Shown piece after piece: positions 40,519-64,000 of a DNA stretch of 64,000 nucleotides (the first letter of the stretch is position 1; each line of letters begins with the position of its first letter). The stretch is from IMG/VR virus record IMGVR_UViG_3300020380_000001, positions 1 through 64,000 of that record. One strand, given 5' to 3'. Position numbers and translations under genes: made by a program. The notes below the pieces were generated by a model. It was not told where the DNA came from and did not search any database. It saw only the letters and a program-made list of their open reading frames with translations.

Positions 40519-40870
40519 TTTTAATTTTACAAGTGATACGAATAAGGCTGCTGAAAAGCGTTTATCGGGCATGCAATATCAACGTGAGTCAGTTGATTAC
40601 CGACGTATATTCCCGTTAGTAAGTATATTCAGAAACGCTGGTGCGAGTAATACGGTTGCTGAGTTCGCTGCCCTGCAAATGTTTAACTTGGCTGAAACAA
40701 CCGGTAAAAGCCCGTTCACTCTTGCACAAGAAACGATAGCCACAGGCAGCCTGTCTCTTGCAGATGATATCATTGATACACTTAATAGACTAGGGTACTC
40801 TGATATGCAATACGGCTCATACAGAGACTCTAGCGACCAAGTAATAGACCGTAACATTAAGAGATTTTGA
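40511..40870 (+). CDS. hypothetical protein
   Basis: ORF coupled to its neighbours. Confidence 0.7.
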   Translation: MADFNFTSDTNKAAEKRLSGMQYQRESVDYRRIFPLVSIFRNAGASNTVAEFAALQMFNLAETTGKSPFTLAQETIATGSLSLADDIIDTLNRLGYSDMQYGSYRDSSDQVIDRNIKRF

Positions 40871-41331
40871 TGAGAAACCGATTTAGTCAAGGTATATACG
40901 AAGTACAAAATACCGAAAAGTATGTCGGTAATAAGCGCCCTACATATAGATCTTCGTGGGAAAGGGGATTCATGCACACGTTGGATCACCACCCATCTGT
41001 ACTTGAATGGGCATCCGAACCTATAAAAATACCTTATGTCAACCCCCAAACTGGCCGCCCCGCTAACTACATTCCTGACTTTCTAATAAAGTATACGAAA
41101 GCTGACGGCTCTGTTGTAGTGGATTTGATTGAAATAAAACCCGCTAGTCAGACACACGAAAGTCGTGCAAAAAGTAAAAACGATAAAACACAGCAAGTTA
41201 TCAATGCAGCAAAATGGGAGGCAGCAAGTAACTTCAGCAAAATGCGCGGAATAACTTTTCGGATATTAACTGAGGATCAGTTGTTCGGGAAGAAGAGTGG
41301 AACAAAAAGAAAAAAACAGGGCTTCGGATAA
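40867..41331 (+). CDS. gp4: head completion nuclease (T4 gp4-like, TnsA-type)
   Basis: YRSSWE..FM..LD, WASEP..IPY, YIPDF, IEIKP, NAAKWEAA, FRILTE motifs. Confidence 0.9.
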   Translation: MMRNRFSQGIYEVQNTEKYVGNKRPTYRSSWERGFMHTLDHHPSVLEWASEPIKIPYVNPQTGRPANYIPDFLIKYTKADGSVVVDLIEIKPASQTHESRAKSKNDKTQQVINAAKWEAASNFSKMRGITFRILTEDQLFGKKSGTKRKKQGFG

Positions 41332-49953: not shown

Positions 49954-51417
49954 ATGAAAACGGCAATTATAAAAATATTAGACGAAGTAAACGTCAAAAT
50001 AGAAGGCGCTGATCCACTAGTCAGACGTAAAATGGTAGACGCTTGTCGGTTCTTTGTACCGAATGCTCGCCATACACCTGCGTATAAATTAGGCCGTTGG
50101 GACGGGTACAAAAACCTATGTACTATCGGTGGTAGAACTTATCTAGCTATGCTGGAAAGAGTGTTGCCTATTCTAATAGAAGCAGGCTACCACGTTGATA
50201 TAGACGACCAACGCCAAGACTTTAGTTTCATTAAATTCGATGAGCTTAAGTCAGATTCCTACTCTCACTTTATATGGCCTGAGGGACACCCTTTCGAAGG
50301 TCAAGCCCTTTCTCTATATGATCACCAGCTAGACGTACTTAACGGTTGTGGTCAGAACTTACAAAGTGTTTATATTGCGCCTACTGCTGCCGGGAAGACA
50401 ATCGTCACAGCTATACTGAGTGACATGATAGGCAAGTATGGCGGTTCTCTCGTAATAGTACCAACTAAAGACCTTGTAGACCAGACATGTGAAGAATACC
50501 ACAACATGGGTTTGGATTACGGTAAGTTTTACGGGGACGAGAAAAACGTCACAGCGCAACATATAGTAGGCACATGGCAGTCACTTGAACAAGCGCGCCT
50601 TAACACTAAAAAGCAAAATGGCAAAGTTACTATTGAGCAAGTAATGGACGGCAAAGTCGGTGTTATTGTGGATGAAACACACAAAGCAAAAGGCACTGTA
50701 TTACTTGATCTACTTTGTAACGAAATGGCACATATTCCTATTCGCTGGGGACTAACAGGCACCTTACCGGAAGACGAGATTGGTCAGTGCTCGCTAGAGT
50801 GCGCGGTGGGTCCTACCTCTGGTAAAATAGATAACCGTGACCTGCAAGAAAAAGGTATCCTCAGTAAGTGTCATATAGATGTGTTACAGACTGTAGAGCT
50901 ATACGAAAAGATAGGCGACTATCATACGGAGAATAAGTTCTTAACAAGTGATCGTAAGCGTATAGAGAGCATAGTTGAGAAACTTATCTTACCTAAGAAA
51001 GAAGGCCAAAACGCGCTTATACTAGTTGACAAAATACCAACTGGCAAACTACTTGAAGAACTAATCCCGGGTAGTATTTTTGTTCACGGCGGTACCCCTA
51101 AAGACAAGCGTAAGGAAGCATACGACTTGGCGAAAACTAACGACGACATAACGGTAATTGCTACGACCGGGGTAGCGTCAACTGGTATCTCGATTAACCG
51201 TATATTCAAGCTGTTTATGTTTGAGTTAGGCAAATCGTATATCAAAATCATTCAGACGATAGGACGTGGCTTGCGTATTGCTAAAGACAAAGACTTTGTC
51301 AACATTTACGACATATGCGCAAACACCAAGTATTCTAAAAAGCACTTGACTGTGCGAAAGAAACACTATCGCACGCATGGATACCCGCACAAAGTGAACA
51401 AGGTGGAAATCTACTAA
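49954..51417 (+). CDS. uvsW: SF2 helicase UvsW-like
   Basis: APTAAGKT, VDETH, GLTGT, QTIGRGLR motifs. Confidence 0.9.
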   Translation: MKTAIIKILDEVNVKIEGADPLVRRKMVDACRFFVPNARHTPAYKLGRWDGYKNLCTIGGRTYLAMLERVLPILIEAGYHVDIDDQRQDFSFIKFDELKSDSYSHFIWPEGHPFEGQALSLYDHQLDVLNGCGQNLQSVYIAPTAAGKTIVTAILSDMIGKYGGSLVIVPTKDLVDQTCEEYHNMGLDYGKFYGDEKNVTAQHIVGTWQSLEQARLNTKKQNGKVTIEQVMDGKVGVIVDETHKAKGTVLLDLLCNEMAHIPIRWGLTGTLPEDEIGQCSLECAVGPTSGKIDNRDLQEKGILSKCHIDVLQTVELYEKIGDYHTENKFLTSDRKRIESIVEKLILPKKEGQNALILVDKIPTGKLLEELIPGSIFVHGGTPKDKRKEAYDLAKTNDDITVIATTGVASTGISINRIFKLFMFELGKSYIKIIQTIGRGLRIAKDKDFVNIYDICANTKYSKKHLTVRKKHYRTHGYPHKVNKVEIY

Positions 51418-51923
51418 TGATAAAAATGATTGCAGCACACGACACAAATAAAGGCATTGGTATTGACAATAAACTGCCCTGGCACTTGCCCGAAGACCTC
51501 GCTCATTTTAAACGCGAGACTGAAGGCAAATATGTCCTGATGGGTAGAAAAACTTTCGAAAGTATTGGAAGGCCATTGCCGAATAGGCACTCAGTTGTCT
51601 TGACACGTGATACCGAATGGCCTTATAATAGTGACTTGGCTAGTAATGATAACTTCGACACTTTGAACACGCGTGTTGAGCTGCTAGAGTTCTTAAACTA
51701 CGCTGAACAGCGCGGCGAAGATGTCATAGTTATAGGCGGCAGTGAGATTTACCAAATGCTGATTAAGTCAGCAGACGAGCTTATTATCACTGTCGTTGAG
51801 GGCGATTATAAGGTTGATTCTTATTTCCCTGATTACGAGCAACTTTTCGAAGAATACGAAAGAAGTCAGCACACAAGTAAAACTGGCTTAGGCTATACAA
51901 TAATAAGAATGAGAGCCGTATGA
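51417..51923 (+). CDS. frd: dihydrofolate reductase
   Basis: IGIDNKLPWHLPEDL..FK, MGRKTFESIGRPLPNR, IGGSEIY. Confidence 0.95.
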   Translation: MIKMIAAHDTNKGIGIDNKLPWHLPEDLAHFKRETEGKYVLMGRKTFESIGRPLPNRHSVVLTRDTEWPYNSDLASNDNFDTLNTRVELLEFLNYAEQRGEDVIVIGGSEIYQMLIKSADELIITVVEGDYKVDSYFPDYEQLFEEYERSQHTSKTGLGYTIIRMRAV

Positions 51924-52444
51924 AAATACTCACACCCGATAACACACTGTACGACTTGGATCAAATGCCTGACATGGTTGACGATGTCAAGTTCAGCGTG
52001 CTTGACTTCAGTAAAGGTCGCCGTAATATAGATGAGCCTGATTTTTACTTCAGTAGCTTAATCTTTATGGAGCGCTTTTCTACCCCTGCTGCGCTACTGC
52101 AAATAGGTGAATTTGAACTTAAAGTACCACTAAACTGGTCTATTATGATTACCAGTAATGAGTTTGATGAAATGTGCATGGTGCCTATTAACTCAATACC
52201 CAAGCGCAACTTTACCGCGTTCGTGTATAACCCGTTAAAAGGTGGCCTTCCATCAGCACTGCCTGTTGAAATTAAAACACTGTATCGCAACTATGAATGG
52301 CACGCGCCTAAGGTGAACCCGGCTAACTTGATTACTATGCCTATTAGTAATACAGAAAAAGCTATTAGAGGTCCACACTGCGTCTATATCGCACGCGAAA
52401 CAGCAAACGTTCCAAAGACATTCTCACTAGCGGATATACTGTGA
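51920..52444 (+). CDS. conserved hypothetical protein
   Basis: ORF coupled to DHFR. Confidence 0.75.
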   Translation: MKILTPDNTLYDLDQMPDMVDDVKFSVLDFSKGRRNIDEPDFYFSSLIFMERFSTPAALLQIGEFELKVPLNWSIMITSNEFDEMCMVPINSIPKRNFTAFVYNPLKGGLPSALPVEIKTLYRNYEWHAPKVNPANLITMPISNTEKAIRGPHCVYIARETANVPKTFSLADIL

Positions 52445-52445
52445 T

Positions 52446-52913
52446 ATGAGCACTACGAGCAAGCGTAAAATTGATCTTAAATCGATGTTGAACGCAGTTG
52501 CCATGGCTGACTTTGGCTGGTACGATCGCTTAGACGAAGACCAACAAAAAGAGCTCAGCGTTTATGCGCTCAATCGGTTTGTTAGTAATTCGTCAAAATA
52601 CCCTGATATGTCTATTATTATGGTAAATGACTTAGCCAACGTTCATGCGAACGTATTCTATAAGCACAAAGCGATGCACTGGAAGCTCGTATGTGCTGCA
52701 ATCGGCATGGGGCACGCTATGCGCTTTGAATATGTGCCTCCACCGAAGCGTAAAAAACTTGATCCTATGACTTCTATTGTTATGGAAGCCAATCCTTTAT
52801 GGAACGAGACTGAAGCCCAGATAGTACTAAGTAGTATGAGTAAGAAAGAAAAACGCATATATCTTAAAGACAGGGGCTATCAGAACGATGAAATTAAAAA
52901 GTTGGTTAAGTAA
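52446..52913 (+). CDS. putative clamp loader small subunit (gp62-like)
   Basis: Y.LNRFVS...D..I...N.L.N..........HW pattern reminiscent of gp62. Confidence 0.45.
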   Translation: MSTTSKRKIDLKSMLNAVAMADFGWYDRLDEDQQKELSVYALNRFVSNSSKYPDMSIIMVNDLANVHANVFYKHKAMHWKLVCAAIGMGHAMRFEYVPPPKRKKLDPMTSIVMEANPLWNETEAQIVLSSMSKKEKRIYLKDRGYQNDEIKKLVK

Positions 52914-53590
52914 TGTCAGATAAGTTTGAATGTAGATTTTGTAAGAAGAAGTTTTCTAAGGAAAATACTTTACTTGTCCATAAATGCATGAAGAAACAGC
53001 GGTACGAAGATCGTGACACTGTTGGCGCTCGCTTAGGGCTAGAAGCCTATAATTTGTTTCTAAAATCATGTTCAAACCGCAAACAAGAGACACAAGAGTC
53101 GTTTATACACTCCAAGTATTACAAGGACTTTGTAAAGTTTGGTAGAGCTCTGTGCGACTTAAACCCGCTTAGTACCGAGGATTATATCAAATACTTGGTA
53201 AAGGAAGGTGTAGCACTAAGCAAGTGGTGTCGTGCTGAGACGTACGACAAGTACATAATAAATCACCTAGAAACTGAACCGGTGCAGCGTGGACTTGAGC
53301 GCTCCATAACCGTGATGGCTGAATGGGCCGAGCGCAATAATATGGCGTATACTGATTATTTCAATCACGTGTCTACGTTTGAAGCAGTTTCTCATATTCA
53401 ATGTGGTAAAATAACACCGTGGCTTATGTACTTGAGTAACGGCGGACAAGCCCTTATGGAGCGTTTTAGTCAAGATCAGATTAAAATAATACAAGGTATT
53501 ATTAACCCTGGCGAATGGCAGCTTATTTTTAATCAGCGCCGTAGTGATGTTAACTTTGCTTTAGAGATTATAGATTCAGCATCCTTATGA
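52913..53590 (+). CDS. C2H2 zinc-finger-containing hypothetical protein
   Basis: FECRFCKKKFSKENTLLVHKC N-terminal finger. Confidence 0.7.
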   Translation: MSDKFECRFCKKKFSKENTLLVHKCMKKQRYEDRDTVGARLGLEAYNLFLKSCSNRKQETQESFIHSKYYKDFVKFGRALCDLNPLSTEDYIKYLVKEGVALSKWCRAETYDKYIINHLETEPVQRGLERSITVMAEWAERNNMAYTDYFNHVSTFEAVSHIQCGKITPWLMYLSNGGQALMERFSQDQIKIIQGIINPGEWQLIFNQRRSDVNFALEIIDSASL

Positions 53591-54219
53591 AAAGACATGG
53601 TGATATAGACATTGACGTCTGTGATCGAGACACACTGTTAAAAGAATTAAATCACATTGACGCTTCTATGTTAAATCGTAACGGCGCCCTAACCCGACAT
53701 AACGTTGGTGTATATGGGCACGCCGTGCCTGTAGATCCTTTCAGTAACTTGTGTTCACTTACATACACTGAGGCAGAAGAAGCAGGCTTTAAAAAAGTTG
53801 ACTTGCTTAACCTATCCAGTTTAAGCTTCTTTAAAAATAAGCGCCATTTGCGCAACGTCATAGCCAAAGACCCCGACTGGGATATGTTTCTCGATAAGGG
53901 TGTTGTTATGCAGTTGAGCCAGATATCGGGTCACTACGGGCTTCTACGAAAGAAACGCCCGCGATCCGTATTAGAGTTAGCAATGTTCATCGCGCTTATA
54001 CGCCCAGGTAAGAGTCATTTACGAGAAAAATCCTGGTACGAAATGTCTTCGGAAATATGGCAGAAAGGCACTGATGGCTATCAATTCAAAAAGAGCCACG
54101 CCATCGCATATGCCTTGAATATCGTTGCTGAAATGAACCTGATCAAATACGAGAAGGTCAAGCTGAATCAGTATGTAGATGTAATTACTGATCAAAAAGT
54201 TATTATCGACGATTTGTAA
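53587..54219 (+). CDS. miniature DNA polymerase III alpha (DnaE)-like protein (210 aa)
   Basis: GDIDID, RHNVGVY, GFKKVDLL, ALIRPG, YQFKKSHAIAYA match DnaE motifs PDxDxD, HxxG, KxDxL, ALxRPG, FNKSHxxAY. Confidence 0.75.
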   Translation: MKRHGDIDIDVCDRDTLLKELNHIDASMLNRNGALTRHNVGVYGHAVPVDPFSNLCSLTYTEAEEAGFKKVDLLNLSSLSFFKNKRHLRNVIAKDPDWDMFLDKGVVMQLSQISGHYGLLRKKRPRSVLELAMFIALIRPGKSHLREKSWYEMSSEIWQKGTDGYQFKKSHAIAYALNIVAEMNLIKYEKVKLNQYVDVITDQKVIIDDL

Positions 54220-54271
54220 ATTCTACTTGAAATAACATTCATAATTTGTTACCTTAGTTGTAAAATACAAG

Positions 54272-55183
54272 GTGAACCCTATGAATGTAGAAGAAAGACT
54301 GAGTAGAATCAACTCAGTGGTTGAATATTTTCACAACCAATACAGCGAGATAGACACCGCTACTGAGCGCCATAACATTTCGTACGCCAATAAGTTATCA
54401 CCGCGGCCAGCATATGCGGCTGCTTTAGTACTTGACCGCAACGTTATCCCTGTGGGTACCGGGTCATTGTGCTTAGATGGTCGCTATGAAATCAGCTATG
54501 TTATACGGGCTGGCCGCACGACTGGTGAGATACTCGAAATAGATACTCGCCTTCAACAAGAACCAGTGTCTGCAGGCCAAATCGACGTATGTATGCGCAC
54601 GGCAAATTCAGTAAACGGATCTCGCGACTTGGGATATCGTTCTCTGAGCGAAGCTACCGCGAATGTGTTTATTGCCGGCATGCTAGCCGAAGCACGTAAA
54701 ACGTCGCTTGAGTTCCAGTTAATCGTTCTTGACAAGGAAAACGAGACTGAATCTGTGTTTTCAATATCATCCACGGAACCGTCATCAAGTAGAAACTTGG
54801 AATCTTTTGACATCCAGTTTACTAATTTCGCACATTTGGGAATACCTGATTCTTGCATAACTATTGATCTGATGGTAGAAAATTCAGCGTTTACTAGCGT
54901 ACAACATAGCAGGACAATCGCACTAGGTGACGACCCAGTTAGTTACTATAGTGGTCCAACTAAGGTACAAAAAACGTTCAGTGGTTTTACTAATGCTAGA
55001 ACGGGCAACATGATGGTGCCTGATACTGTGCAGGTAATGTGGGTGACTGATGAAGGTGCCACAACATATGACAACTTTTTTGTATTCGTGAAAAAGGAGT
55101 GTCCGGAAGCAATCCCGCATCTTGTCTTGAATTACGGATACCCGGAGGATTTCAATGAACAAAACAATATCATTAAACCGTGA
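54272..55183 (+). CDS. hypothetical protein
   Basis: Long ORF after a promoter-like intergenic stretch. Confidence 0.7.
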   Translation: MNPMNVEERLSRINSVVEYFHNQYSEIDTATERHNISYANKLSPRPAYAAALVLDRNVIPVGTGSLCLDGRYEISYVIRAGRTTGEILEIDTRLQQEPVSAGQIDVCMRTANSVNGSRDLGYRSLSEATANVFIAGMLAEARKTSLEFQLIVLDKENETESVFSISSTEPSSSRNLESFDIQFTNFAHLGIPDSCITIDLMVENSAFTSVQHSRTIALGDDPVSYYSGPTKVQKTFSGFTNARTGNMMVPDTVQVMWVTDEGATTYDNFFVFVKKECPEAIPHLVLNYGYPEDFNEQNNIIKP

Positions 55184-55742
55184 CAATACGTTCTTTACCT
55201 CCGATTGGCATTTTGGTGACAAGAACATCATAAAAAATTGTAATCGTCCTTATAGTGATATGGACGAAATGCACGCTGCCTTAATTGATATTTGGAACGC
55301 AAAAGTTTCCGATGATAGCACTGTAGTTAATATGGGCGACTTTGCTTTCTGGGGACCGTCAAAGTTCAATGAGCTAGGTAACGTGCTTAAGCAGTTAAAG
55401 GGCAAGATACTATTTGTCCCAGGAAATCACGACCGGTTAAATCTATGGCACAATACGCTTGACGCGTATCCTGAGTTAAAAGATAAGGTGCGTATATTAC
55501 CGCCTGTCGCTGATTTTAGAGTCGGTAAACAACATATCGTCGGGTGTCACTACGCAATGATGATATGGAATAAGCAACACTATGGTGCTTGGCACTTATA
55601 TGGGCACTCCCATGATAGACACTTGACTGGTATTGGCCTAAGCATGAATATATGTATTGATGCTCACCCTAATTTTGATCTGTTCACATACGAAGAGATT
55701 GAAGAAAAGATATCAAAGTTAAAGATTTTCCTTCCGTTCTAA
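55155..55742 (+). CDS. calcineurin-like metallophosphoesterase
   Basis: SDWHFG, MGDF, PGNHD, CHY, HLYGHSH motifs. Confidence 0.9.
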   Translation: MNKTISLNRDNTFFTSDWHFGDKNIIKNCNRPYSDMDEMHAALIDIWNAKVSDDSTVVNMGDFAFWGPSKFNELGNVLKQLKGKILFVPGNHDRLNLWHNTLDAYPELKDKVRILPPVADFRVGKQHIVGCHYAMMIWNKQHYGAWHLYGHSHDRHLTGIGLSMNICIDAHPNFDLFTYEEIEEKISKLKIFLPF

Positions 55743-55837: not shown

Positions 55838-57274
55838 ATGACAACACATTTTAACACGCAACACACTCCTGTAGAAGAAGTTACTGAAGTAGAAGCCCGT
55901 ACAACAAACGGCGCAGTAACTAACATCACTTCCGGTGAGAAATCACTTGATTTGTTCTTTGTGGCAGGTGCATCCCGTAACATGAGTGACGACGAAATCA
56001 TCATAATGTTTGATGACGCGCACGACGAAAACCCAGAACTGGCATTCCGTGTCTTGCAATGGGCTCGTGATGTGCGAGGCGGAGCAGGCGAACGTCGTTT
56101 CTTTAAAGTAATAATGAAACACTTGGTTGCTAACCAACGCACTTACGGTGCTAAGAACATCAAGGCGCTGCTGACCAAATCGTCTGAGATTGGCCGCTGG
56201 CGTGACTTACTTGACTTGTTCATCAAGTGCACTGATGCCAACAAAAAGTTCATCGGTAAGTTGTTTAACGAAGCGCTTGATTCAGGCAACGGTTTGGCTG
56301 CTAAATGGCTACCGCGCAAAGGTAAATTCGCACGCGCTGTTCGTACGTCTATGGGCTACAAGGACACGCCGAAGGAATACCGCCGCAAGATCGTTGACTT
56401 GACTAAAGTAGTTGAGACCCAAATGTGCCAGGGCAAGTGGGACGAGATCAATTACTCGCACGTACCGTCGGTCGCGTTTAAGAAATACCGCAAGGCATTT
56501 CAGCGTCATGACCCTGTACGCTTTGAAGCATTCATTCAATCAGCTATTGAAGGTGAAACAAAGGTCAACGCCGGTGCTATATTCCCGCATGAAATATTAG
56601 CGCCGCTTGGTAAGGGTAGAACCTCGTCAAAAACTGAAGTTGACGCCATGCAAGCACAGTGGCAAAACTTGGCTGATTCGATGGTAGACGCGCCCGATGT
56701 ACTGCCTATGATTGACGTGTCTGCGTCGATGAGCGGTGACCCTATGCATATTGCAGTGTCGCTAGGCATGTACTTGGCTGAACGCAACACTGGTCAATTT
56801 AAAAATGCGTACATGACTTTCGAGTCACAACCTAAGTTTGGCTTCGTGAAGGAAGGCGCAAAAATTGACGCTCGCTACAAGGATATTTTACGCGCAGGTT
56901 GGGGCGGTAGCACTGACTTGTCAGCGGCTTTTAAGAAAATCCTTGAAGTTGCTGTAAACAACAATGTTCCGGCTGATCATATGCCTAAAATGTTGCTTGT
57001 GTTATCTGACATGGAGTTCGATTCCTGGGGTAACCGCGGTCTTACATCCAATGTAAAAGACTTGTTTAAAAAGGCAGGCTACGAGTGTCCTACTATTGTG
57101 TTCTGGAACTTAGACGCTCGCCCTGGTAACAACCCAGTAAAAGCTACTGACAAAGACATGGTAATGGTGTCCGGATTTAGTCCGGCTATAGCGAAGACCA
57201 TAATGGAAGGCAAGGACCTGTCACCGATGGGAATAATGCTTGATGCTATTATGAAAGATCGCTATACACTGTGA
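55838..57274 (+). CDS. TROVE/VWA (Ro60-like, DUF2828-type) protein
   Basis: WARDVRGGAGER, GRWRDL, AAKWLPR, YS.VPS.A, MIDVSASM MIDAS, VLSDMEFD, IVFWNL, VSGFS motifs. Confidence 0.8.
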   Translation: MTTHFNTQHTPVEEVTEVEARTTNGAVTNITSGEKSLDLFFVAGASRNMSDDEIIIMFDDAHDENPELAFRVLQWARDVRGGAGERRFFKVIMKHLVANQRTYGAKNIKALLTKSSEIGRWRDLLDLFIKCTDANKKFIGKLFNEALDSGNGLAAKWLPRKGKFARAVRTSMGYKDTPKEYRRKIVDLTKVVETQMCQGKWDEINYSHVPSVAFKKYRKAFQRHDPVRFEAFIQSAIEGETKVNAGAIFPHEILAPLGKGRTSSKTEVDAMQAQWQNLADSMVDAPDVLPMIDVSASMSGDPMHIAVSLGMYLAERNTGQFKNAYMTFESQPKFGFVKEGAKIDARYKDILRAGWGGSTDLSAAFKKILEVAVNNNVPADHMPKMLLVLSDMEFDSWGNRGLTSNVKDLFKKAGYECPTIVFWNLDARPGNNPVKATDKDMVMVSGFSPAIAKTIMEGKDLSPMGIMLDAIMKDRYTL

Positions 57275-57361: not shown

Positions 57362-57649
57362 ATGTACACGAGCTTTCAACTAAAGAGTTGCACAAAAACT
57401 CGATACTATATCAGAACAGTGAACATAAGTACGCATTGCATGTTGACTGACGAGTTACGGACGATATACGGTGAAGAGTTGTGTGAGGAAAAGTATGAAC
57501 CGGGCGTTGCCTTACTAAAAGGCTTTCGTGTTGAGTTTTATGAACTTGATGATTTTCTCAACACAGATATGGCCATAGACATAGACAACAATAAAAAGGA
57601 AACAATACGTGAAAGAACGCTATCAGGCATTGATTGCCCCGCTGCTTGA
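57362..57649 (+). CDS. hypothetical protein
   Basis: ATAAATA at 57334 and GGGAG RBS. Confidence 0.55.
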   Translation: MYTSFQLKSCTKTRYYIRTVNISTHCMLTDELRTIYGEELCEEKYEPGVALLKGFRVEFYELDDFLNTDMAIDIDNNKKETIRERTLSGIDCPAA

Positions 57650-58190
57650 ACTCGATCCTGGATTTCAAGAGTATTTTGATTTCGCATACGACGCGCATAG
57701 TGATCGAAAAAGAATCGGGACAAACGACCTATATATTATTCACCCTATTAACGTAGCGTTAAACGTCCTAGAAACGGGCTTGTCGCATGATGATAAGGTG
57801 ATGGCAATCCGTGTAGCAGTAATGCACGATGTAGTGGAAGACGAAGACGTAGAGCTTGTTACGGTAATTAATAAATTCGGTACTGAGTTTGCGTATCATC
57901 TGTATTACACTTATACAGAGATAACCAAGTCTTCTGGTAACCGCAAGTTTAGAAAAATACTTGAAGCCAATCACTATGCTGCTGGTACCCGAGTATCACA
58001 GACCGTCAAAGTGTGCGATGCTGCCGATAATATAATGACGATTCATTTGAAGTCGGGCCGCAAGTTTGCATATGATTATATGAATGAAAAAGTTACACTT
58101 CATCATAAACTTGCATTGGCCGATCCAATGGCTCTCAAGTTATTTGTTAAAAGAATGTCGATTGTTAAACAAGCGCTAAAGGCTGCCTAG
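57609..58190 (+). CDS. HD-domain hydrolase, RelA/SpoT hydrolase (Mesh1)-like
   Basis: AH...R......Y..HP..VA, AVMHDVVED, VKVCD..DN motifs. Confidence 0.8.
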   Translation: MKERYQALIAPLLELDPGFQEYFDFAYDAHSDRKRIGTNDLYIIHPINVALNVLETGLSHDDKVMAIRVAVMHDVVEDEDVELVTVINKFGTEFAYHLYYTYTEITKSSGNRKFRKILEANHYAAGTRVSQTVKVCDAADNIMTIHLKSGRKFAYDYMNEKVTLHHKLALADPMALKLFVKRMSIVKQALKAA

Positions 58191-59478: not shown

Positions 59479-60687
59479 ATGAGCTGGGATCAGAAGTTAC
59501 TAGATACTATACTAGAGAATTTCGGGCCACATAAAATATCAAGAAAAGGTTTCAGGACTAGAAATTGCCCGATGTGTGTTACTAAAGGACACACGCCTGA
59601 CACCAAGAAACGATTCGGTATGAAAGTCGATCATAAAGGCTTCGGTGGGTCGTGCTTCAATTGCGGCTTTAAGTTCAAATACGAATATCACAAGAAACAG
59701 CTGAGCAAGCCGCTCAAGTCATTTATGCGCCAACTCGGCGTTAAAAAGCAACTCATAGATGAGATCAAGTACGGGTTATTTGAAGACCTGCACAGTGGTG
59801 TCATCTCTGACTTGATGCTTGAGCCGGAGCCCGAAGAAACAGAAGTTCCGTTTGCTGAACTATTCAAAGACAAGAAGCCCAAACTCAACGAAGTTGCACA
59901 AAGTCTTATTAAAGACGAGAAACAAATACGTCAAATACTCAGAACAAGGATAACAGATAATGTCATGCCTGAGTTTAACGAGTTTAGTACCCGTTACGTG
60001 CAAATAACAAAGCGCTGGTCACGCGAGCATAGTTATCCGGGTGATGCTAAGCCTATGAGTTATTACCTTGATAGAGCTGAGCTGGGGCATCCTATTCCTG
60101 CTGATGTGAATGAGTGTTTGCTTTATATGTACGAACGTGACTTGCTTGAGTTCGACGACATATGTTGGAGTTACGCTGTCACTAAAGAAGCAGGCAATCG
60201 TATAATACTTCCGTTTGAATTTGGCGGTAAACGGATCGGTTATACGGCGCGTGCAGTAAATGACCGCGCTGCAAAGATTAAAAAGTATCATTCAATGATG
60301 CCGGACGATGCGATATTCAATTACCACTTATTCCATAACAACTACAAACGAACGTTTGCGGTGTTGTATGAAGGTGTTATTGACGCGTATGTTATGCAAG
60401 GCATGGCATGTGGCGGAAGAAACATTAACGATGATCAAATATACATGATCAAAAATTTAGGCATGCCTGTAATTGTTGTGCCTGATAACGACAAAGACGG
60501 CGACGACTTGATCGACATAGCTATAAGGGAAGGCTGGTCAGTATCGTTTCCGCCTTGGAAACATAAATTTAAGGACGCGGCGGCTGCCGCTGCTAAGTAC
60601 GGTAGGATTTACACAATCCAAAGTATACTAGCTAGCGTAGAGACTAATCCACTAACAATAAATCTAAAAAAGGATATGAATGTCTGA
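59479..60687 (+). CDS. gp61: DNA primase (gp61-like)
   Basis: N-terminal CPMC...H..CFNC zinc ribbon; GYTAR; TOPRIM YEGVIDA and PDNDKDG. Confidence 0.85.
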   Translation: MSWDQKLLDTILENFGPHKISRKGFRTRNCPMCVTKGHTPDTKKRFGMKVDHKGFGGSCFNCGFKFKYEYHKKQLSKPLKSFMRQLGVKKQLIDEIKYGLFEDLHSGVISDLMLEPEPEETEVPFAELFKDKKPKLNEVAQSLIKDEKQIRQILRTRITDNVMPEFNEFSTRYVQITKRWSREHSYPGDAKPMSYYLDRAELGHPIPADVNECLLYMYERDLLEFDDICWSYAVTKEAGNRIILPFEFGGKRIGYTARAVNDRAAKIKKYHSMMPDDAIFNYHLFHNNYKRTFAVLYEGVIDAYVMQGMACGGRNINDDQIYMIKNLGMPVIVVPDNDKDGDDLIDIAIREGWSVSFPPWKHKFKDAAAAAAKYGRIYTIQSILASVETNPLTINLKKDMNV

Positions 60688-62080
60688 TTACATCCAAGAA
60701 TATACTCCGCAGGTCGAGGAGTTATTCATTCAATTTTTCTTAAGCGATCCTGAATTATTTGTGCGCTGTCGTAATGTGATTAAGTCTGATCACTACGCCT
60801 CTGAGACAAATAAAAAGACTGTCGATTTCATGGTAAAATATGCTGATGAATACAGCGCATTGCCTGACTTAGATCAATTAAAAGCGGTGGTGGGCAAACA
60901 ATTCAACGTAACAAAGGACCTGCAAGATGAGCACAAGGAATGGTTCCTTGATAACTACGAAAAGTTTGCTCGACACAAAGAAATTATCAAAGCTGTCCTT
61001 GATGCTCCGCGCTTAATTGAAAAGAAAGAATACGGCAGCGTTGAACAACTAGTTAAAGAAGCAGTGCAAGTAGGTCTTGTTAAAGACTTGGGTACTGATT
61101 ACTTCGACGATCCGTTAGGCCGTTTGCGGCGCATGAAAGAAAAGAAACCTCTTGTGTCCACCGGGTATAGGGATTTGGACCACGCGTTGTTTGGTGGTGT
61201 TGAAGTAGGTTCACTTAACATTTACGCAGGACAATCCGGTACTGGTAAGAGTATTTTCCTACAAAATTCTGCAAGAAAGTCTGTCATGCGCGGTGAAAAT
61301 GCGATGTACATATCACTGGAACTGTCGGAGGACTTGTGTGCGTTGCGTCTAGACGCTATGTTTGCGGGGTTGAGTACACAAAACGTGATGAGAGATAGTG
61401 AAGACGCTTCGACTCGTATTGCTATGTTTGCTAAAAAGTACGGCGGCTCACTACAAATAAAACGTTTTCCGTCCGGTACCACTGCTGCTGAGATTCGTGC
61501 TTACGTTAAAGAGTATCAGATCCAGACAGGCCGCAAAGTAAACAAACTGTGTGTTGACTACTTGGACTTATGCTCGCCTTACCGTACTAAAGTAAATGCT
61601 AGTGACGTATTCACCAAAGACAAATATGTGTCGGAAGAGTTGCGTGACTTGGCAGCTGAATTAGACGTTGTGTTGGATACAGCCTCGCAGCTTAACCGTG
61701 ACAGTCACGAAGCAGTTGACTTTGGGCACCAACACATTGCAGGCGGTGTATCTAAAATTAACACAGCCGATAACGTGTTCGGCATTTACGTAACAAACAC
61801 CATGAAAGAGAACGGCCGTTATCAGTTACAACTTTTGAAGACACGCTCTTCAAGTGGTGTAGGTAAACGTATTGATTTAAAATACAATCCTGCTACTATG
61901 CAAATGGACGATCTTGAAGAAGGCGAGCGCGGAAGTATTGAGACACAAACCAGTTCTATTCTAGATTCTATAAATAAGAAAGGGACAATGGGCAAAGAGC
62001 CGCCCGCACCTACGCAAGATGCGTCCAGTACCGTGGATGCGTTCTCTAAAGTTAGGAATAGTTTGCGTAGAAGTGATTAA
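60680..62080 (+). CDS. gp41: replicative DnaB-like helicase (gp41-like)
   Basis: AGQSGTGKS, ISLELSE, VDYLDL, SEELR.LA, TASQLNR, LLKTRSS. Confidence 0.92.
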   Translation: MSDYIQEYTPQVEELFIQFFLSDPELFVRCRNVIKSDHYASETNKKTVDFMVKYADEYSALPDLDQLKAVVGKQFNVTKDLQDEHKEWFLDNYEKFARHKEIIKAVLDAPRLIEKKEYGSVEQLVKEAVQVGLVKDLGTDYFDDPLGRLRRMKEKKPLVSTGYRDLDHALFGGVEVGSLNIYAGQSGTGKSIFLQNSARKSVMRGENAMYISLELSEDLCALRLDAMFAGLSTQNVMRDSEDASTRIAMFAKKYGGSLQIKRFPSGTTAAEIRAYVKEYQIQTGRKVNKLCVDYLDLCSPYRTKVNASDVFTKDKYVSEELRDLAAELDVVLDTASQLNRDSHEAVDFGHQHIAGGVSKINTADNVFGIYVTNTMKENGRYQLQLLKTRSSSGVGKRIDLKYNPATMQMDDLEEGERGSIETQTSSILDSINKKGTMGKEPPAPTQDASSTVDAFSKVRNSLRRSD

Positions 62081-62398: not shown

Positions 62399-62546
62399 AG
62401 TTTGGCTTAACCCGAACGGCTCAGCCGACAAGGAAACGGTAGACCCGAAAGCGGAAGCTGTCTACAATAGTCTAAAAAGCACAGAGAAGACCGTTTTTGT
62501 AAAGGCATTGCATGATGAAAAAAGAAAAAAACGCCTTGACCGGTAA
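62382..62546 (+). CDS. 54-aa hypothetical protein (not in ORF track)
   Basis: MARKSKVWLNPNG...KRLDR; AAGGA RBS; overlaps its neighbours. Confidence 0.45.
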   Translation: MARKSKVWLNPNGSADKETVDPKAEAVYNSLKSTEKTVFVKALHDEKRKKRLDR

Positions 62547-64000
62547 GCTTTTGCAGGTTTTAGAACCTCGTGATATATCTATATCGCGCAAAGCCGGCGA
62601 GATTATAGAACAGGCGGTGACTACTAACCTGCAGATGATTAACCAAGTTGCTGCGTCAAGCAACGTGTCTGCCAAGGATGTAGTGGACCTTTGTGTGCAA
62701 CTATCAGCACAACCGGAAACATCTGTTCTTTCAACTCTACGATATGTATCGTCGTCGTACTTTCTTAGCAATGAAGCGAACCGCGCTTTTAAGTACGTTA
62801 TTATGACGGGTTTAGATTCAGATGTGATTCGCACACATGATGGTCAAACTGCAATTGGTGACCCCGATCTTAACCCGGATTTGGTCTTATCACAGCACGA
62901 CGAATGTGCATTTATAACCATGCTTTCGTTAGCAAATTACCCGTACAAGCACGCAACCACGCCGCAAGTACAGGATTATTGGCAACTATTACTGGGCGAA
63001 ATACTTTCGCTTTACGGTGGTTCATTATTGCCAACCGCGTATATGGTACTATCCGAGGCAGTGGGTGTCGTGTCTACTATGTTTGATTCTGCGCCACGTA
63101 TATACCGCAGTATTATTCGTCAAAGTACACTAAGCCCTGAATACAAGCATTCACTGATTAACGAACACGCCGCGCCGGTTGATAAGAAGCGTGGCATCAC
63201 GCATTTAGAAGATTTAGACGATGCTCTGTTTCACCGAGCAATTAATGATTTGGAACTATGTGTTGTAACTGAGAAACTGGACGGAAGTAATATGCGATTT
63301 GGCGTAGAAAACGGCCAGATGTATACCGTGTTTGGGAATCTGGATAAGGTATATTCAGTTGACGAACATCCCGAAAACTTCAGTAGCAACTATCGGATAT
63401 TTGCTCACCGCGCATTGTTAACTCGTGAAAGCGAAGTGACATCGCTGGGCGACTTTGAAATAGAAGTAGAAGTGCTTTACGACGAGATACCCAACGTAAT
63501 TCGTTACGACGATACAGTGAATGACATCGTGTTATTAAGGCAGTTAAAGGGCGACCCGCACATACTGCCTAAAGTCGCTGAGATTTACGAGTCAAATGGT
63601 ATCACTAGTGTCGAGCATGATTGCTTAGTTAGTAGAGACGGCAATACTGCGCTAAAAGAAAAGCGAACATCTAAAGTTATGTTCAGTGAAGTTCCGCAAA
63701 TGTCACAGAAGTTCTTACAAGAGTCCTTGGCTAAAAGCGACTTAAGTACTGCAATTGAGCAATACAACGCAAATCTAGGTGAGACAGACGCAGAGACAGG
63801 TATGTCAGTAAGCGAAGTTGCAAACTTTAAACTGAACGGCAAACGTCCCGAAGATACTGACCAAGATACTTGGAATTCTTTAAAACAAAAAGTCAAAGAC
63901 TCAAGAAACCCGTGCCGTGACAAGATCAAAAAAGCCAAGCAAGAGGTGAAGAAACACCTCTTATCTGCGCTGGTTCATTCTAGTACAAGTAAGTTTTCTG
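62512..64000 (+). CDS. partial large protein with ligase-like KxDG nucleotidyltransferase domain (runs off the window; not in ORF track)
   Basis: Frame open from ATG 62512 to the window end; GITHLEDL...VTEKLDGSNMRFG at ~63193-63303. Confidence 0.75.
   Translation, partial: MMKKEKNALTGKLLQVLEPRDISISRKAGEIIEQAVTTNLQMINQVAASSNVSAKDVVDLCVQLSAQPETSVLSTLRYVSSSYFLSNEANRAFKYVIMTGLDSDVIRTHDGQTAIGDPDLNPDLVLSQHDECAFITMLSLANYPYKHATTPQVQDYWQLLLGEILSLYGGSLLPTAYMVLSEAVGVVSTMFDSAPRIYRSIIRQSTLSPEYKHSLINEHAAPVDKKRGITHLEDLDDALFHRAINDLELCVVTEKLDGSNMRFGVENGQMYTVFGNLDKVYSVDEHPENFSSNYRIFAHRALLTRESEVTSLGDFEIEVEVLYDEIPNVIRYDDTVNDIVLLRQLKGDPHILPKVAEIYESNGITSVEHDCLVSRDGNTALKEKRTSKVMFSEVPQMSQKFLQESLAKSDLSTAIEQYNANLGETDAETGMSVSEVANFKLNGKRPEDTDQDTWNSLKQKVKDSRNPCRDKIKKAKQEVKKHLLSALVHSSTSKFS

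What the first reader, a model, noticed from the sequence alone, without database searches (positions are those of the whole stretch)
52913..54219. Miniature C-family (DnaE-like) polymerase retaining the catalytic aspartates, coupled to a zinc-finger protein
Seen: 210 aa carrying in order GDIDID, RHNVGVY, GFKKVDLL, ALIRPG and YQFKKSHAIAYA, with no PHP, OB or clamp-binding domains. It overlaps the upstream C2H2-finger gene (ATGA) and lies near clamp-loader-like, primase and helicase genes. Established: DnaE is >1000 aa and uses DxD plus the KxD Asp as its catalytic triad. Inference: a minimal palm-only nucleotidyltransferase, or one piece of a split polymerase, with unknown function (priming, repair, or protein/RNA modification).
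Basis: partly seen in the sequence, partly recalled or inferred. Interest (0 to 1): 0.6.

Follow-up and report, generated by a model that had tools for sequence, protein, structure and literature searches.

The report
Half of a split mini-polymerase
This 210-residue phage protein is the C-terminal half of a stripped-down bacterial-type (Pol III alpha) DNA polymerase whose other half is encoded 200 kb away; the arrangement was predicted computationally for this group of giant phages in 2021 and has never been tested at the bench.

Summary
ORF 53587-54219 (210 aa) carries all five DnaE motifs in order and overlaps the upstream zinc-finger gene by ATGA.

It is not a palm-only enzyme. It is the C-terminal half (DxD strand, KxD strand, core fingers) of the split minimal Pol III alpha that Iyer et al. 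2021 described for group 2.2 (Rak2-like) jumbo phages.

- **Other half:** the N-terminal half (GRGS nucleotide-binding motif) lies at 254.5 kb of the same 306.5-kb marine phage genome. The two pieces abut at E. coli alpha residues about 393 and 397.
- **Conservation:** the catalytic Asp residues are invariant in 49 homologues.
- **Structure:** the model (pLDDT 90) matches only C-family polymerases (Z 8-10; next unrelated fold Z 3.3).
- **Assembly:** a complex prediction passes its controls (0.87 against 0.44), and one natural 375-aa fusion of both halves exists.
- **Genome context:** a 978-aa family B polymerase is present. No PHP, Pol A or Pol Y gene is detected.
- **Zinc-finger partner:** it is a C2HC finger on a helical domain with no known fold. 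It lies upstream in 66 of 68 informative relatives; its role is unknown.
- **Correction:** the clamp loader is not near this gene. It lies next to the N-half.

This is a new member of a known, biochemically untested kind.

The parts
53587..54219 (+). C-terminal half of the split minimal Pol III alpha (210 aa). It holds the DxD metal-binding strand (D6, D8, D10), the KxD strand (K70, D72) and the core fingers with the RPG (R139) and KSH (H171) motifs. Its partner, the N-terminal half, lies outside the window at G000:C1:254517-255077 (-).
   Evidence: phrog_11778 E 1.6e-60. Invariant residues. PDB profile hit to M. tuberculosis DnaE1 in four colinear pieces, E 7e-4. AF2 model pLDDT 90.4. VIA-align top 14 rows are all C-family polymerases, Z 6.4-10.0, with the next fold at Z 3.3; the model spans E. 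coli alpha about 397-795. Complex with the N-half scores 0.87 against a best control of 0.44.
52913..53590 (+). Conserved upstream gene, translationally overlapped (ATGA). It encodes 225 aa: a single N-terminal C2HC zinc finger (C7, C10, H23, C25) followed by an all-helical domain with no known fold. It belongs to phrog_11058, function unknown, and is a candidate accessory subunit.
   Evidence: phrog_11058 E 3.3e-62. 93 phage records. Upstream on the same strand in 71 of 80 IMG/VR loci, and in 66 of 68 loci with at least 2 kb upstream. Invariant ligands. AF2 pLDDT 94.7. No PDB fold match: Foldseek best E 0.8, VIA-wide best Z 4.1. ESM Atlas matches only its own viral family.
52446..52913 (+). 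Conserved neighbour of unknown function (155 aa, phrog_11758), in the same run of overlapping or abutting genes.
   Evidence: phrog_11758 E 3.9e-20. Found upstream in 36 of 80 loci by tblastn.
51920..52444 (+). Conserved neighbour of unknown function (174 aa, phrog_11279). It is the first gene of the tightly packed run after DHFR.
   Evidence: phrog_11279 E 3.5e-39. Found upstream in 59 of 80 loci.
59479..60687 (+). DnaG-type primase (402 aa); conserved downstream context of the C-half.
   Evidence: phrog_47 E 2.7e-21. Weak Toprim_2 match. Found downstream within 6 kb in 57 of 80 loci.
60680..62080 (+). DnaB-like replicative helicase (466 aa); context.
   Evidence: phrog_19 E 1.2e-68.

Best explanation
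The 210-aa protein is the C-terminal half of a two-gene minimal C-family (Pol III alpha-like) polymerase of a marine Rak2-like (group 2.2) jumbo phage.

**What each half supplies.** The N-half (about 184 aa, encoded about 200 kb away) supplies the first palm elements and the GRGS motif that holds the triphosphate of the incoming nucleotide. The C-half supplies the next palm strand with the two metal-binding Asp (D6, D8, equivalent to E. coli D401, D403), the strand with the Lys and third Asp (K70, D72, equivalent to K553, D555), and a trimmed fingers domain with the Arg-Pro-Gly and Lys-Ser-His motifs.

**How it assembles.** The two proteins associate non-covalently, strand against strand, into one Pol-beta-like nucleotidyltransferase centre. 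No intein is present.

**What it lacks, and what follows.** The enzyme has no PHP, OB or clamp-binding domain and probably no thumb. It is therefore expected to be a distributive DNA polymerase doing short-patch synthesis beside the phage's 978-aa family B replicase. The likely jobs are extension of primers, gap filling or repair within the replisome.

**Status of each step.** Shown computationally: homology, residue conservation, fold, the complementary half, a predicted interface with controls, a natural fusion, and conserved replisome neighbourhoods. Inferred: catalytic activity, DNA as the substrate, and the cellular role.
For: - **Family:** phrog_11778 'DNA polymerase', E 1.6e-60.
- **Conservation:** the catalytic and substrate-binding residues are invariant in 49 homologues.
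- **Sequence homology to solved structures:** the profile hits M. tuberculosis DnaE1 in four colinear pieces.
- **Fold:** the AF2 model (pLDDT 90.4) aligns only with PolC and DnaE. PolC 3f2b gives Z 10.0, rmsd 4.4, 199 residues aligned. The model spans E. coli alpha 397-795. The next unrelated fold scores Z 3.3.
- **N-half:** it is found in the same genome as phrog_11127, with PF07733 over its cut-off. GRGSS is invariant. Its profile aligns to E. coli alpha 316-393, so the two halves abut.
- **Complex:** score 0.87, best of 3 controls 0.44. That mark was reached by 58 of 80 solved complexes and 2 of 110 mismatched pairs. The runs agree in at least 85% of contacts and the partner's pLDDT is 84. 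N-half residues 140-143 pair with C-half residues 9-13.
- **Natural fusion:** the 375-aa protein P0241 carries both halves in one frame.
- **Co-occurrence in phage records:** 96 for the C-half and 92 for the N-half, with near-identical genus counts.
- **Neighbourhoods:** the C-half sits with primase and DnaB (57 of 80 loci). The N-half sits with the clamp loader (68 of 80 loci).
- **Other polymerases:** the genome has a family B polymerase but no Pol A, Pol Y, PHP or HhH domain.
- **Literature:** the same reading was published by Iyer et al. 2021 (PMC7824862).
Against: - No biochemical or genetic data exist for any member; none was found in six literature searches.
- The complex pass may partly reflect the model's memory of the single-chain DnaE fold, and my own alignments were used.
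- The fusion is known from a single 2.4-kb metagenomic contig.
- Pfam's own models barely see the C-half (DNA_pol3_finger E 0.047).
- About half of the DnaE palm-fingers span has no counterpart here, so loss of templated synthesis cannot be excluded.
- The contigs from RNA libraries do not prove transcription.
Confidence: 0.75

Rival explanations
1. The C-half works alone as a miniature palm-only nucleotidyltransferase.
For: It holds all three catalytic Asp and folds confidently on its own.
Against: - It lacks the preceding palm strand and the GRGS triphosphate-binding motif. These are invariant in the separate N-half and abut it in DnaE coordinates.
- The N-half co-occurs with it across the clade.
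- The predicted interface buries the DxD strand against the N-half.
- A natural fusion exists.
Confidence: 0.05
2. The reconstituted enzyme is a nucleotidyltransferase with a non-replicative substrate, for example tailing or modifying RNA or DNA ends, or making a nucleotide signal. It would not be a template-directed DNA polymerase.
For: - The Pol-beta-like superfamily includes many non-templated transferases.
- Thumb, clamp-binding and OB domains are absent.
- RNA-repair-type genes (a TROVE/Ro-like protein and an RNA-ligase-like ORF) lie within 10 kb.
Against: - The only structural relatives are C-family DNA polymerases.
- The fingers motifs RPG and KSH are invariant. H171 aligns with E. coli alpha H760, which from memory is proposed as the sugar gate.
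- Both halves sit in replication neighbourhoods: primase and DnaB for one, the clamp loader for the other.
Confidence: 0.12
3. The two genes are decaying remnants of a captured host dnaE, or a non-catalytic structural relic.
For: Extreme reduction and splitting can accompany gene decay.
Against: - Hundreds of intact homologues of uniform length (180-220 aa) exist across very diverse phages.
- The catalytic residues are invariant at 40-50% overall identity.
- Both model confidently.
- In the neighbouring zinc-finger gene, 9 of the 11 listed differences to a related strain fall at third codon positions.
Confidence: 0.03
4. The halves are joined after translation by a split intein, as in cyanobacterial DnaE.
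For: A split dnaE joined by trans-splicing is a known precedent (established knowledge).
Against: - Only about 11 residues follow the last DnaE-like position of the N-half, and only 4-5 precede the DxD of the C-half. That leaves no room for intein halves.
- The split site differs from the cyanobacterial one.
- The natural fusion joins the halves directly.
Confidence: 0.01

Closest known systems
Split minimal DNA Pol III alpha of group 2.2 jumbo phages (Iyer, Anantharaman, Krishnan, Burroughs and Aravind 2021, Viruses 13:63; PMC7824862)
   Same: - Two standalone proteins from distant genes: an N-terminal NTP-binding part and a C-terminal Mg- and template-binding part.
- No other Pol III domains.
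- Coexists with a family B polymerase, DnaG, DnaB, an RFC-like loader, a gp32-like SSB and UvsX/UvsW in a jumbo myophage-type genome.
- Homologues are found in Rak2, 121Q, PA5oct, CBB, Atu_ph07 and SCTP-2.
   Different: - This is a new, uncultivated marine member, at most 52% identical to anything but near-identical copies of itself.
- That paper does not mention the conserved upstream zinc-finger gene, a natural fused form, or a tested interface. Those are added here.
Bacterial replicative Pol III alpha (DnaE1; E. coli, T. aquaticus, M. tuberculosis) and PolC
   Same: - Pol-beta-like palm with the Asp triad, the GRGS motif, and the RPG and KSH fingers motifs.
- Structural alignment Z 8-10 over about 200 residues.
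   Different: - About 390 aa in two chains instead of more than 1100 in one.
- No PHP, OB or clamp- and tau-binding domains; the thumb is probably absent too.
- About half of the 397-795 span has no counterpart.
- It is not the main replicase here.
Intein-split DnaE of cyanobacteria
   Same: A C-family polymerase encoded by two distant genes.
   Different: - The cyanobacterial enzyme is a full-size polymerase rejoined by protein trans-splicing, split at a different site.
- Here there are no intein halves.
Split family B polymerase of chimalliviruses (bioRxiv 2026, PMC13648687, seen)
   Same: A jumbo-phage polymerase built from separately encoded pieces.
   Different: It belongs to a different polymerase family (B) and a different phage group (nucleus-forming), and it is the replicase itself. 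I saw only the title and the start of the abstract.

Membership tests
C-family DNA polymerase catalytic core (Pol III alpha / DnaE / PolC) | Pol-beta-like palm with three catalytic acidic residues (DxD plus the Asp of KxD) | tested here: met
   D6, D8 and D72 are invariant in 49 homologues. They align with the PDIDID and KMD motifs of M. tuberculosis DnaE1. The model superposes on PolC and DnaE at Z 8-10.
C-family DNA polymerase catalytic core (Pol III alpha / DnaE / PolC) | Triphosphate-binding GS motif (GRGS) on the palm element before the DxD strand, in the same polypeptide | tested here: not met
   It is absent from this ORF. It is present and invariant in the separate N-half at G000:C1:254.5 kb. 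The feature is met only by the two-protein assembly.
C-family DNA polymerase catalytic core (Pol III alpha / DnaE / PolC) | Fingers domain with the conserved RPG and KSH motifs | tested here: met
   R139, P140 and H171 are invariant. The matching stretch aligns to E. coli alpha 751-767. The fingers are trimmed, and the model ends at about E. coli residue 795.
C-family DNA polymerase catalytic core (Pol III alpha / DnaE / PolC) | N-terminal PHP domain | tested here: not met
   PF02811 has no match anywhere in the 306.5-kb genome, while the control finds it in 14 of 14 reference genomes.
C-family DNA polymerase catalytic core (Pol III alpha / DnaE / PolC) | Thumb, HhH / beta-clamp-binding and OB C-terminal domains | tested here: not met
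   PF14579 has no match in the genome. The protein ends at the equivalent of E. coli residue about 795. About 200 of the 400 DnaE residues in the aligned span have no counterpart. Absence of the thumb itself is inferred from lengths, not shown residue by residue.
C-family DNA polymerase catalytic core (Pol III alpha / DnaE / PolC) | Template-directed DNA synthesis | not testable with these tools
   This needs primer-extension assays with the purified N-half and C-half.
Split minimal Pol III alpha of group 2.2 jumbo phages (Iyer et al. 2021) | [quoted passage not shown] | tested here: met
   The C-half is at 53.6 kb (+) and the N-half at 254.5 kb (-) of one 306.5-kb record. No C-half lies within 6 kb of any of 80 related N-half loci, and no N-half within 6 kb of any of 80 related C-half loci.
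Split minimal Pol III alpha of group 2.2 jumbo phages (Iyer et al. 2021) | Jumbo phage with a family B polymerase and T4-like replisome parts, and no other Pol III domains | tested here: met
   The record is 306.5 kb with terminal repeats. It has a 978-aa Pol B, SSB, UvsX, UvsW, primase and DnaB and an RFC-like loader. PHP and HhH are absent.
Split minimal Pol III alpha of group 2.2 jumbo phages (Iyer et al. 2021) | Sequence kinship with the Rak2, 121Q, PA5oct, CBB and Atu_ph07 proteins | tested here: met
   tblastn finds 96 records, all such jumbo phages, at 33-49% identity with E down to 2e-48. The N-half is found in 92 records.
Intein-split DnaE | Intein halves at the split ends | tested here: not met
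   Only about 11 and about 5 residues flank the junction.
Classical C2H2 zinc finger (upstream gene) | C-x2-4-C-x12-H-x3-5-H ligand set reaching the Pfam threshold | tested here: not met
   The ligands are C-x2-C-x12-H-x-C. The zf-C2H2 families score below their cut-offs, with a best E of 1.2e-4 among 38 members. It is C2H2-like in form and C2HC in ligands.

The most novel reading that the evidence does not exclude
The minimal polymerase may really be a three-part machine. In this reading the conserved upstream C2HC-finger/helical protein, which has no known fold, is an obligatory third subunit. It would replace the missing thumb or clamp-binding parts by gripping the primer-template or tethering the enzyme to primase and DnaB. 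The assembly would then act as a dedicated primer-extension (hand-off) polymerase between DnaG and the family B replicase, as DnaE does for PolC in Bacillus or Pol alpha does in eukaryotes. This would give the smallest natural C-family polymerase and a working model for the ancestral Pol III core.
Probability: 0.15. Interest if true: 0.8.

Novelty: new member of a known kind. Interest (0 to 1): 0.45.

Why it matters
If the roughly 390-residue, two-chain enzyme is active, it defines the minimal catalytic core of the C-family polymerases and offers a simple system for asking what the PHP, thumb, OB and clamp-binding parts add. It is also a concrete model for how the bacterial replicase could have been assembled from smaller parts, as Iyer et al. 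proposed.

It would also show that a T4-like replisome with a family B replicase uses a second polymerase of bacterial type.

The family is large and widespread in marine and other metagenomes. Word search gives 1129 proteins; the profile search gives 672 clusters at 50% identity. It occurs in cultivable phages of E. coli, Klebsiella, Pseudomonas and Agrobacterium, so bench tests are within reach.

- the exact junction between the halves;
- a controlled interface prediction;
- one natural fusion of the two halves;
- the conserved neighbourhoods of both halves;
- the nearly constant zinc-finger neighbour.

Tried and rejected
- **DNA search of isolated phages.** A megablast of the region against phage records found nothing. 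The phage is known only from metagenomes.
- **Pfam on the C-half.** Only a sub-threshold fingers match came back. PHROGs and profile or structure comparison were needed.
- **Foldseek on the C-half model.** It ranked DnaE first, but only at E about 1e-3 and TM about 0.4, because of the large DnaE insertions. VIA-align gave the clear separation.
- **Zinc-finger protein.**
  - The word search found only 3 relatives, so I built the alignment from neighbouring ORFs of 80 loci.
  - Neither Foldseek (best E 0.8) nor the wide VIA search (best Z 4.1) found a known fold.
  - T4 gp59 appeared at Z 3.5, which is noise level. It is not claimed. Pfam T4_Gp59_C finds nothing in the genome.
  - The ESM Atlas returned only the protein's own family.
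- **Promoter and terminator scan of 51-56 kb.** Counts were no higher than in shuffled sequence.
- **Intein trans-splicing.** Rejected for lack of room at the junction.
- **Clamp-loader proximity to the C-half.** Rejected.
- **RNA libraries.** Contigs 93-100% alike cover parts of the operon, but they cannot show transcription, strand or level.
- **Not tested.** Binding of the zinc-finger protein to the polymerase halves was left untested, because the single complex job went to the likeliest pair.
- **Literature.** Searches for experimental work on the family found none.
Full report
**1. What is there**

The window is the first 64 kb of a 306.5-kb virus record with direct terminal repeats. ORF 53587..54219 (+) encodes 210 aa and carries, in order, GDIDID, RHNVGVY, GFKKVDLL, ALIRPG and YQFKKSHAIAYA. 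Its ATG overlaps the stop of ORF 52913..53590 as ATGA. That upstream ORF overlaps the stop of the gene before it. Genes 51417 (DHFR), 51920, 52446, 52913 and 53587 therefore form one tightly packed run on the same strand.

The surrounding genes are those of a T4-like replication and recombination module:
- ATP-dependent ligase (36788)
- gp32-like SSB (46619)
- UvsX (47731)
- a weak UvsY match (49193)
- UvsW (49954)
- DHFR (51417)
- a metallophosphoesterase (55155)
- a TROVE/Ro-like protein (55838)
- DnaG-type primase (59479)
- DnaB-like helicase (60680)

No clamp-loader-like gene was found in the window. The RFC-like loader lies at 251.2-252.2 kb.

**2. The protein is a real, conserved DnaE-like piece**

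PHROGs places it in phrog_11778 'DNA polymerase' at E 1.6e-60. Pfam gives only a sub-threshold fingers match.

tblastn finds it in 96 phage records. All are Rak2-, 121Q-, PA5oct-, CBB-, Atu_ph07- or SCTP-2-type jumbo phages, at 33-49% identity, annotated variously as 'DNA polymerase', 'DnaE-like DNA polymerase III alpha' or hypothetical. The word search returns 1129 metagenomic relatives. The exhaustive profile search returns 672 clusters at 50% identity, almost all 180-220 aa long.

In an alignment of 49 homologues at 40-50% identity, D6, D8, D10, H38, K70, D72, R139, P140, K142 and H171 are invariant. A profile of that alignment hits M. tuberculosis DnaE1 (5lew, E 7e-4) in four colinear pieces: PDIDID, GLLKMDFL, ALYRPG and YAFNKSHA. 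It also hits E. coli alpha at 751-767.

By the motif alignment, D6, D8 and D72 correspond to E. coli D401, D403 and D555, the established catalytic triad. That correspondence rests on established knowledge of Pol III alpha.

**3. Structure**

The AlphaFold2 model built on the alignment has a mean pLDDT of 90.4. Foldseek ranks DnaE chains first, but weakly (E 1.5e-3, TM about 0.4), because DnaE carries large insertions.

VIA-align gives a clean result. The top 14 rows are all C-family polymerases:
- PolC 3f2b: Z 10.0, rmsd 4.4 A, 199 residues aligned
- T. aquaticus 3e0d: Z 9.3
- E. coli 4jom: Z 8.4

The model spans E. coli residues about 397-795. The next unrelated fold scores Z 3.3. About 200 model residues therefore cover a 400-residue stretch of DnaE. 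The second part of the palm and the core of the fingers are kept. The rest of that span, which by my recollection of the DnaE domain map includes the thumb, has no counterpart.

**4. The other half**

A genome-wide scan with PF07733 found one more DnaE-like stretch, at 254.5 kb on the minus strand. This ORF is 186 aa from a GTG start or 184 aa from the nearby ATG (G000:C1:254517-255077). It matches phrog_11127 'DNA polymerase' at E 1e-35 and PF07733 positions 22-95 at 24.4 bits, against a cut-off of 23.9.

In 50 homologues the motif WGVGRGSSVSSY is almost invariant. This is the GS motif of the Pol-beta-like transferases that binds the triphosphate of the incoming nucleotide (established knowledge).

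The N-half profile aligns to E. coli alpha 316-393 (E 1.2e-5), and the C-half begins at about 397. The gene is thus cut between the GS-motif element and the DxD strand, with nothing missing at the junction. Only about 11 residues trail the N-half and 4-5 precede the DxD, so there is no room for intein halves.

**5. Do the halves work together?**

Four lines of evidence bear on this.

(a) Co-occurrence. The C-half is in 96 phage records and the N-half in 92, with nearly identical genus counts. This is weak evidence, because the clade shares many genes.

(b) Complex prediction with controls. The score is 0.87 and the best of 3 controls is 0.44. That mark was reached by 58 of 80 solved complexes and by 2 of 110 mismatched pairs. 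The runs agree in at least 85% of contacts and the partner's pLDDT is 84. N-half residues 140-143, the strand before GRGS, pair with C-half residues 9-13, the DxD strand. This is what a rebuilt palm sheet requires. Two caveats apply: my own alignments were used, and the model may remember the single-chain DnaE fold.

(c) A natural fusion. The exhaustive search found one 375-aa protein, P0241. Residues 7-184 match the N-half profile (hhalign probability 99.5%, E 9.5e-23), and residues 189-371 match the C-half profile. It is a single open frame on a 2.4-kb metagenomic contig, with all motifs intact. It is one contig only.

(d) Neighbourhoods. Both halves sit in replication neighbourhoods that are conserved across 80 loci each.
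- The C-half has primase downstream in 57 of 80 loci.
- The N-half has the clamp loader nearby in 68 of 80, a GroES-like ORF in 75 of 80, and a 120-aa ORF immediately downstream in 73 of 80.
- Neither half was ever found within 6 kb of the other in these sets.
- In Stenotrophomonas phage RAS14 the N-half, the zinc-finger gene and the C-half lie within 15 kb on one strand.

**6. Genome context of polymerases**

The genome has a 978-aa family B polymerase at about 141-144 kb. It has no detectable Pol A, Pol Y, PHP or HhH domain. The mini-enzyme is therefore the only second polymerase candidate, and it is not the main replicase.

**7. The zinc-finger partner**

ORF 52913..53590 (225 aa) belongs to phrog_11058, of unknown function, and occurs in 93 phage records.

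Its position relative to the C-half varies with the phage:
- PA5oct: adjacent, 23 bp away
- Rak2, 121Q, CBB: about 0.4 kb upstream
- Phosso, Atu_ph07: about 1 kb
- SCTP-2: 3.6 kb
- RAS14: about 10 kb

In 80 IMG/VR loci it lies upstream on the same strand in 71. Among the 68 loci with at least 2 kb of upstream sequence, it is present in 66. Two loci with 6 kb of upstream sequence lack it.

C7, C10, H23 and C25 are invariant, so the finger is C-x2-C-x12-H-x-C. R30, W105, E122 and W170 are also invariant. 37 of 38 members give weak zf-C2H2 matches.

The model (pLDDT 94.7) is a finger followed by about 14 helices. It has no PDB match, and in the ESM Atlas it matches only its own viral family.

The published description of the split polymerase does not mention this gene. 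Its linkage is the tightest of all the neighbours. Because the whole block is syntenic in this clade, linkage alone does not show a shared function.

**8. Habitat and expression**

The stretch is held by marine and seawater metagenome runs from several studies. Contigs from four metatranscriptome runs, 93-100% alike, cover parts of genes 51920, 52446 and the zinc-finger gene, the zinc-finger/C-half junction, and C-half positions 53659-53920. Such contigs do not prove transcription.

The listed differences to the related strain in the zinc-finger gene fall at third codon positions in 9 of 11 cases. That fits purifying selection (my count).

**9. Comparison with what is known**

Iyer et al. [quoted passage not shown] They suggested it cooperates with the family B enzyme in synthesis of one strand or in repair. 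This finding is a member of that family.

I found no experimental study. A 2026 review of jumbo phages and a 2026 survey of bacterial polymerases do not treat it. Isolate papers merely list 'DnaE'.

**10. Verdict**

- **Observation:** confirmed, with two small corrections. The finger is C2HC, and there is no clamp loader nearby.
- **Interpretation:** partly supported. 'One piece of a split polymerase' is right, and 'palm-only' is wrong.
- **Novelty:** a new member of a known, computationally described kind.
- **Interest:** moderate. The object is remarkable and testable but already published.
- **Added here:** the junction mapping, the controlled interface prediction, the natural fusion, the two conserved neighbourhoods, and the near-constant zinc-finger neighbour of unknown fold.

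Noticed in passing
P0241; L088:1066-2193 (+), ENA metagenome contig of 2415 bp: A natural single-chain fusion (375 aa) of the N- and C-halves of the minimal Pol III alpha, with all motifs intact. It is the only such form among the 150 best of 672 cluster representatives. It has just 1 kb of upstream sequence, and no zinc-finger gene is seen there.
   Followed up: partly
G000:C1:254171-254530 (-), outside the window: A 120-aa ORF (phrog_14844, unknown function, charged low-complexity tail) overlaps the end of the N-half gene and is conserved downstream of it in 73 of 80 related loci. A GroES-like 123-aa ORF (252440-252808) is conserved in 75 of 80, and the RFC-like clamp loader (251231-252166) in 68 of 80.
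   Followed up: partly
window 51600-51629 (+): A perfect sigma-70 consensus, TTGACA-18 nt-TATAAT (12 of 12), lies inside the DHFR gene, 290 nt upstream of the run of overlapping genes that ends with the C-half. The scan as a whole found no more promoter-like sites than in shuffled sequence.
   Followed up: no
window 55838-57274 (+) and 62512-63999 (+, runs off the window): A TROVE/Ro-like RNA-binding protein (phrog_850, E 3e-129) and an ORF with a weak RNA-ligase match (PF09414, E 5e-4) flank the primase-helicase pair. This may be an RNA-repair module of the kind discussed for jumbo phages.
   Followed up: no
window 40867-41331 (+): A TnsA-like endonuclease domain protein (PF08722, E 1.2e-19) lies between tail-tube and terminase genes. 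It may be a homing or mobile endonuclease.
   Followed up: no
window 57609-58190 (+): A 193-aa ORF that, read by eye, carries an H...HP...HD..ED pattern like HD-domain (SpoT/Mesh1-type) hydrolases. It was not scanned against any family.
   Followed up: no
OP752703.1 (Stenotrophomonas phage RAS14) 189807-205048; L089, L092: In this phage the N-half (189807-190358), the zinc-finger gene (193644-194333) and the C-half (204467-205048) lie on one strand within 15 kb. In the window's genome the halves are separated by about 200 kb.
   Followed up: partly
window 51400-55200: The stretch is held, nearly whole, by marine and seawater metagenome runs from several studies. A strain about 93-97% alike appears in contigs of marine metatranscriptome libraries.
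   Followed up: partly
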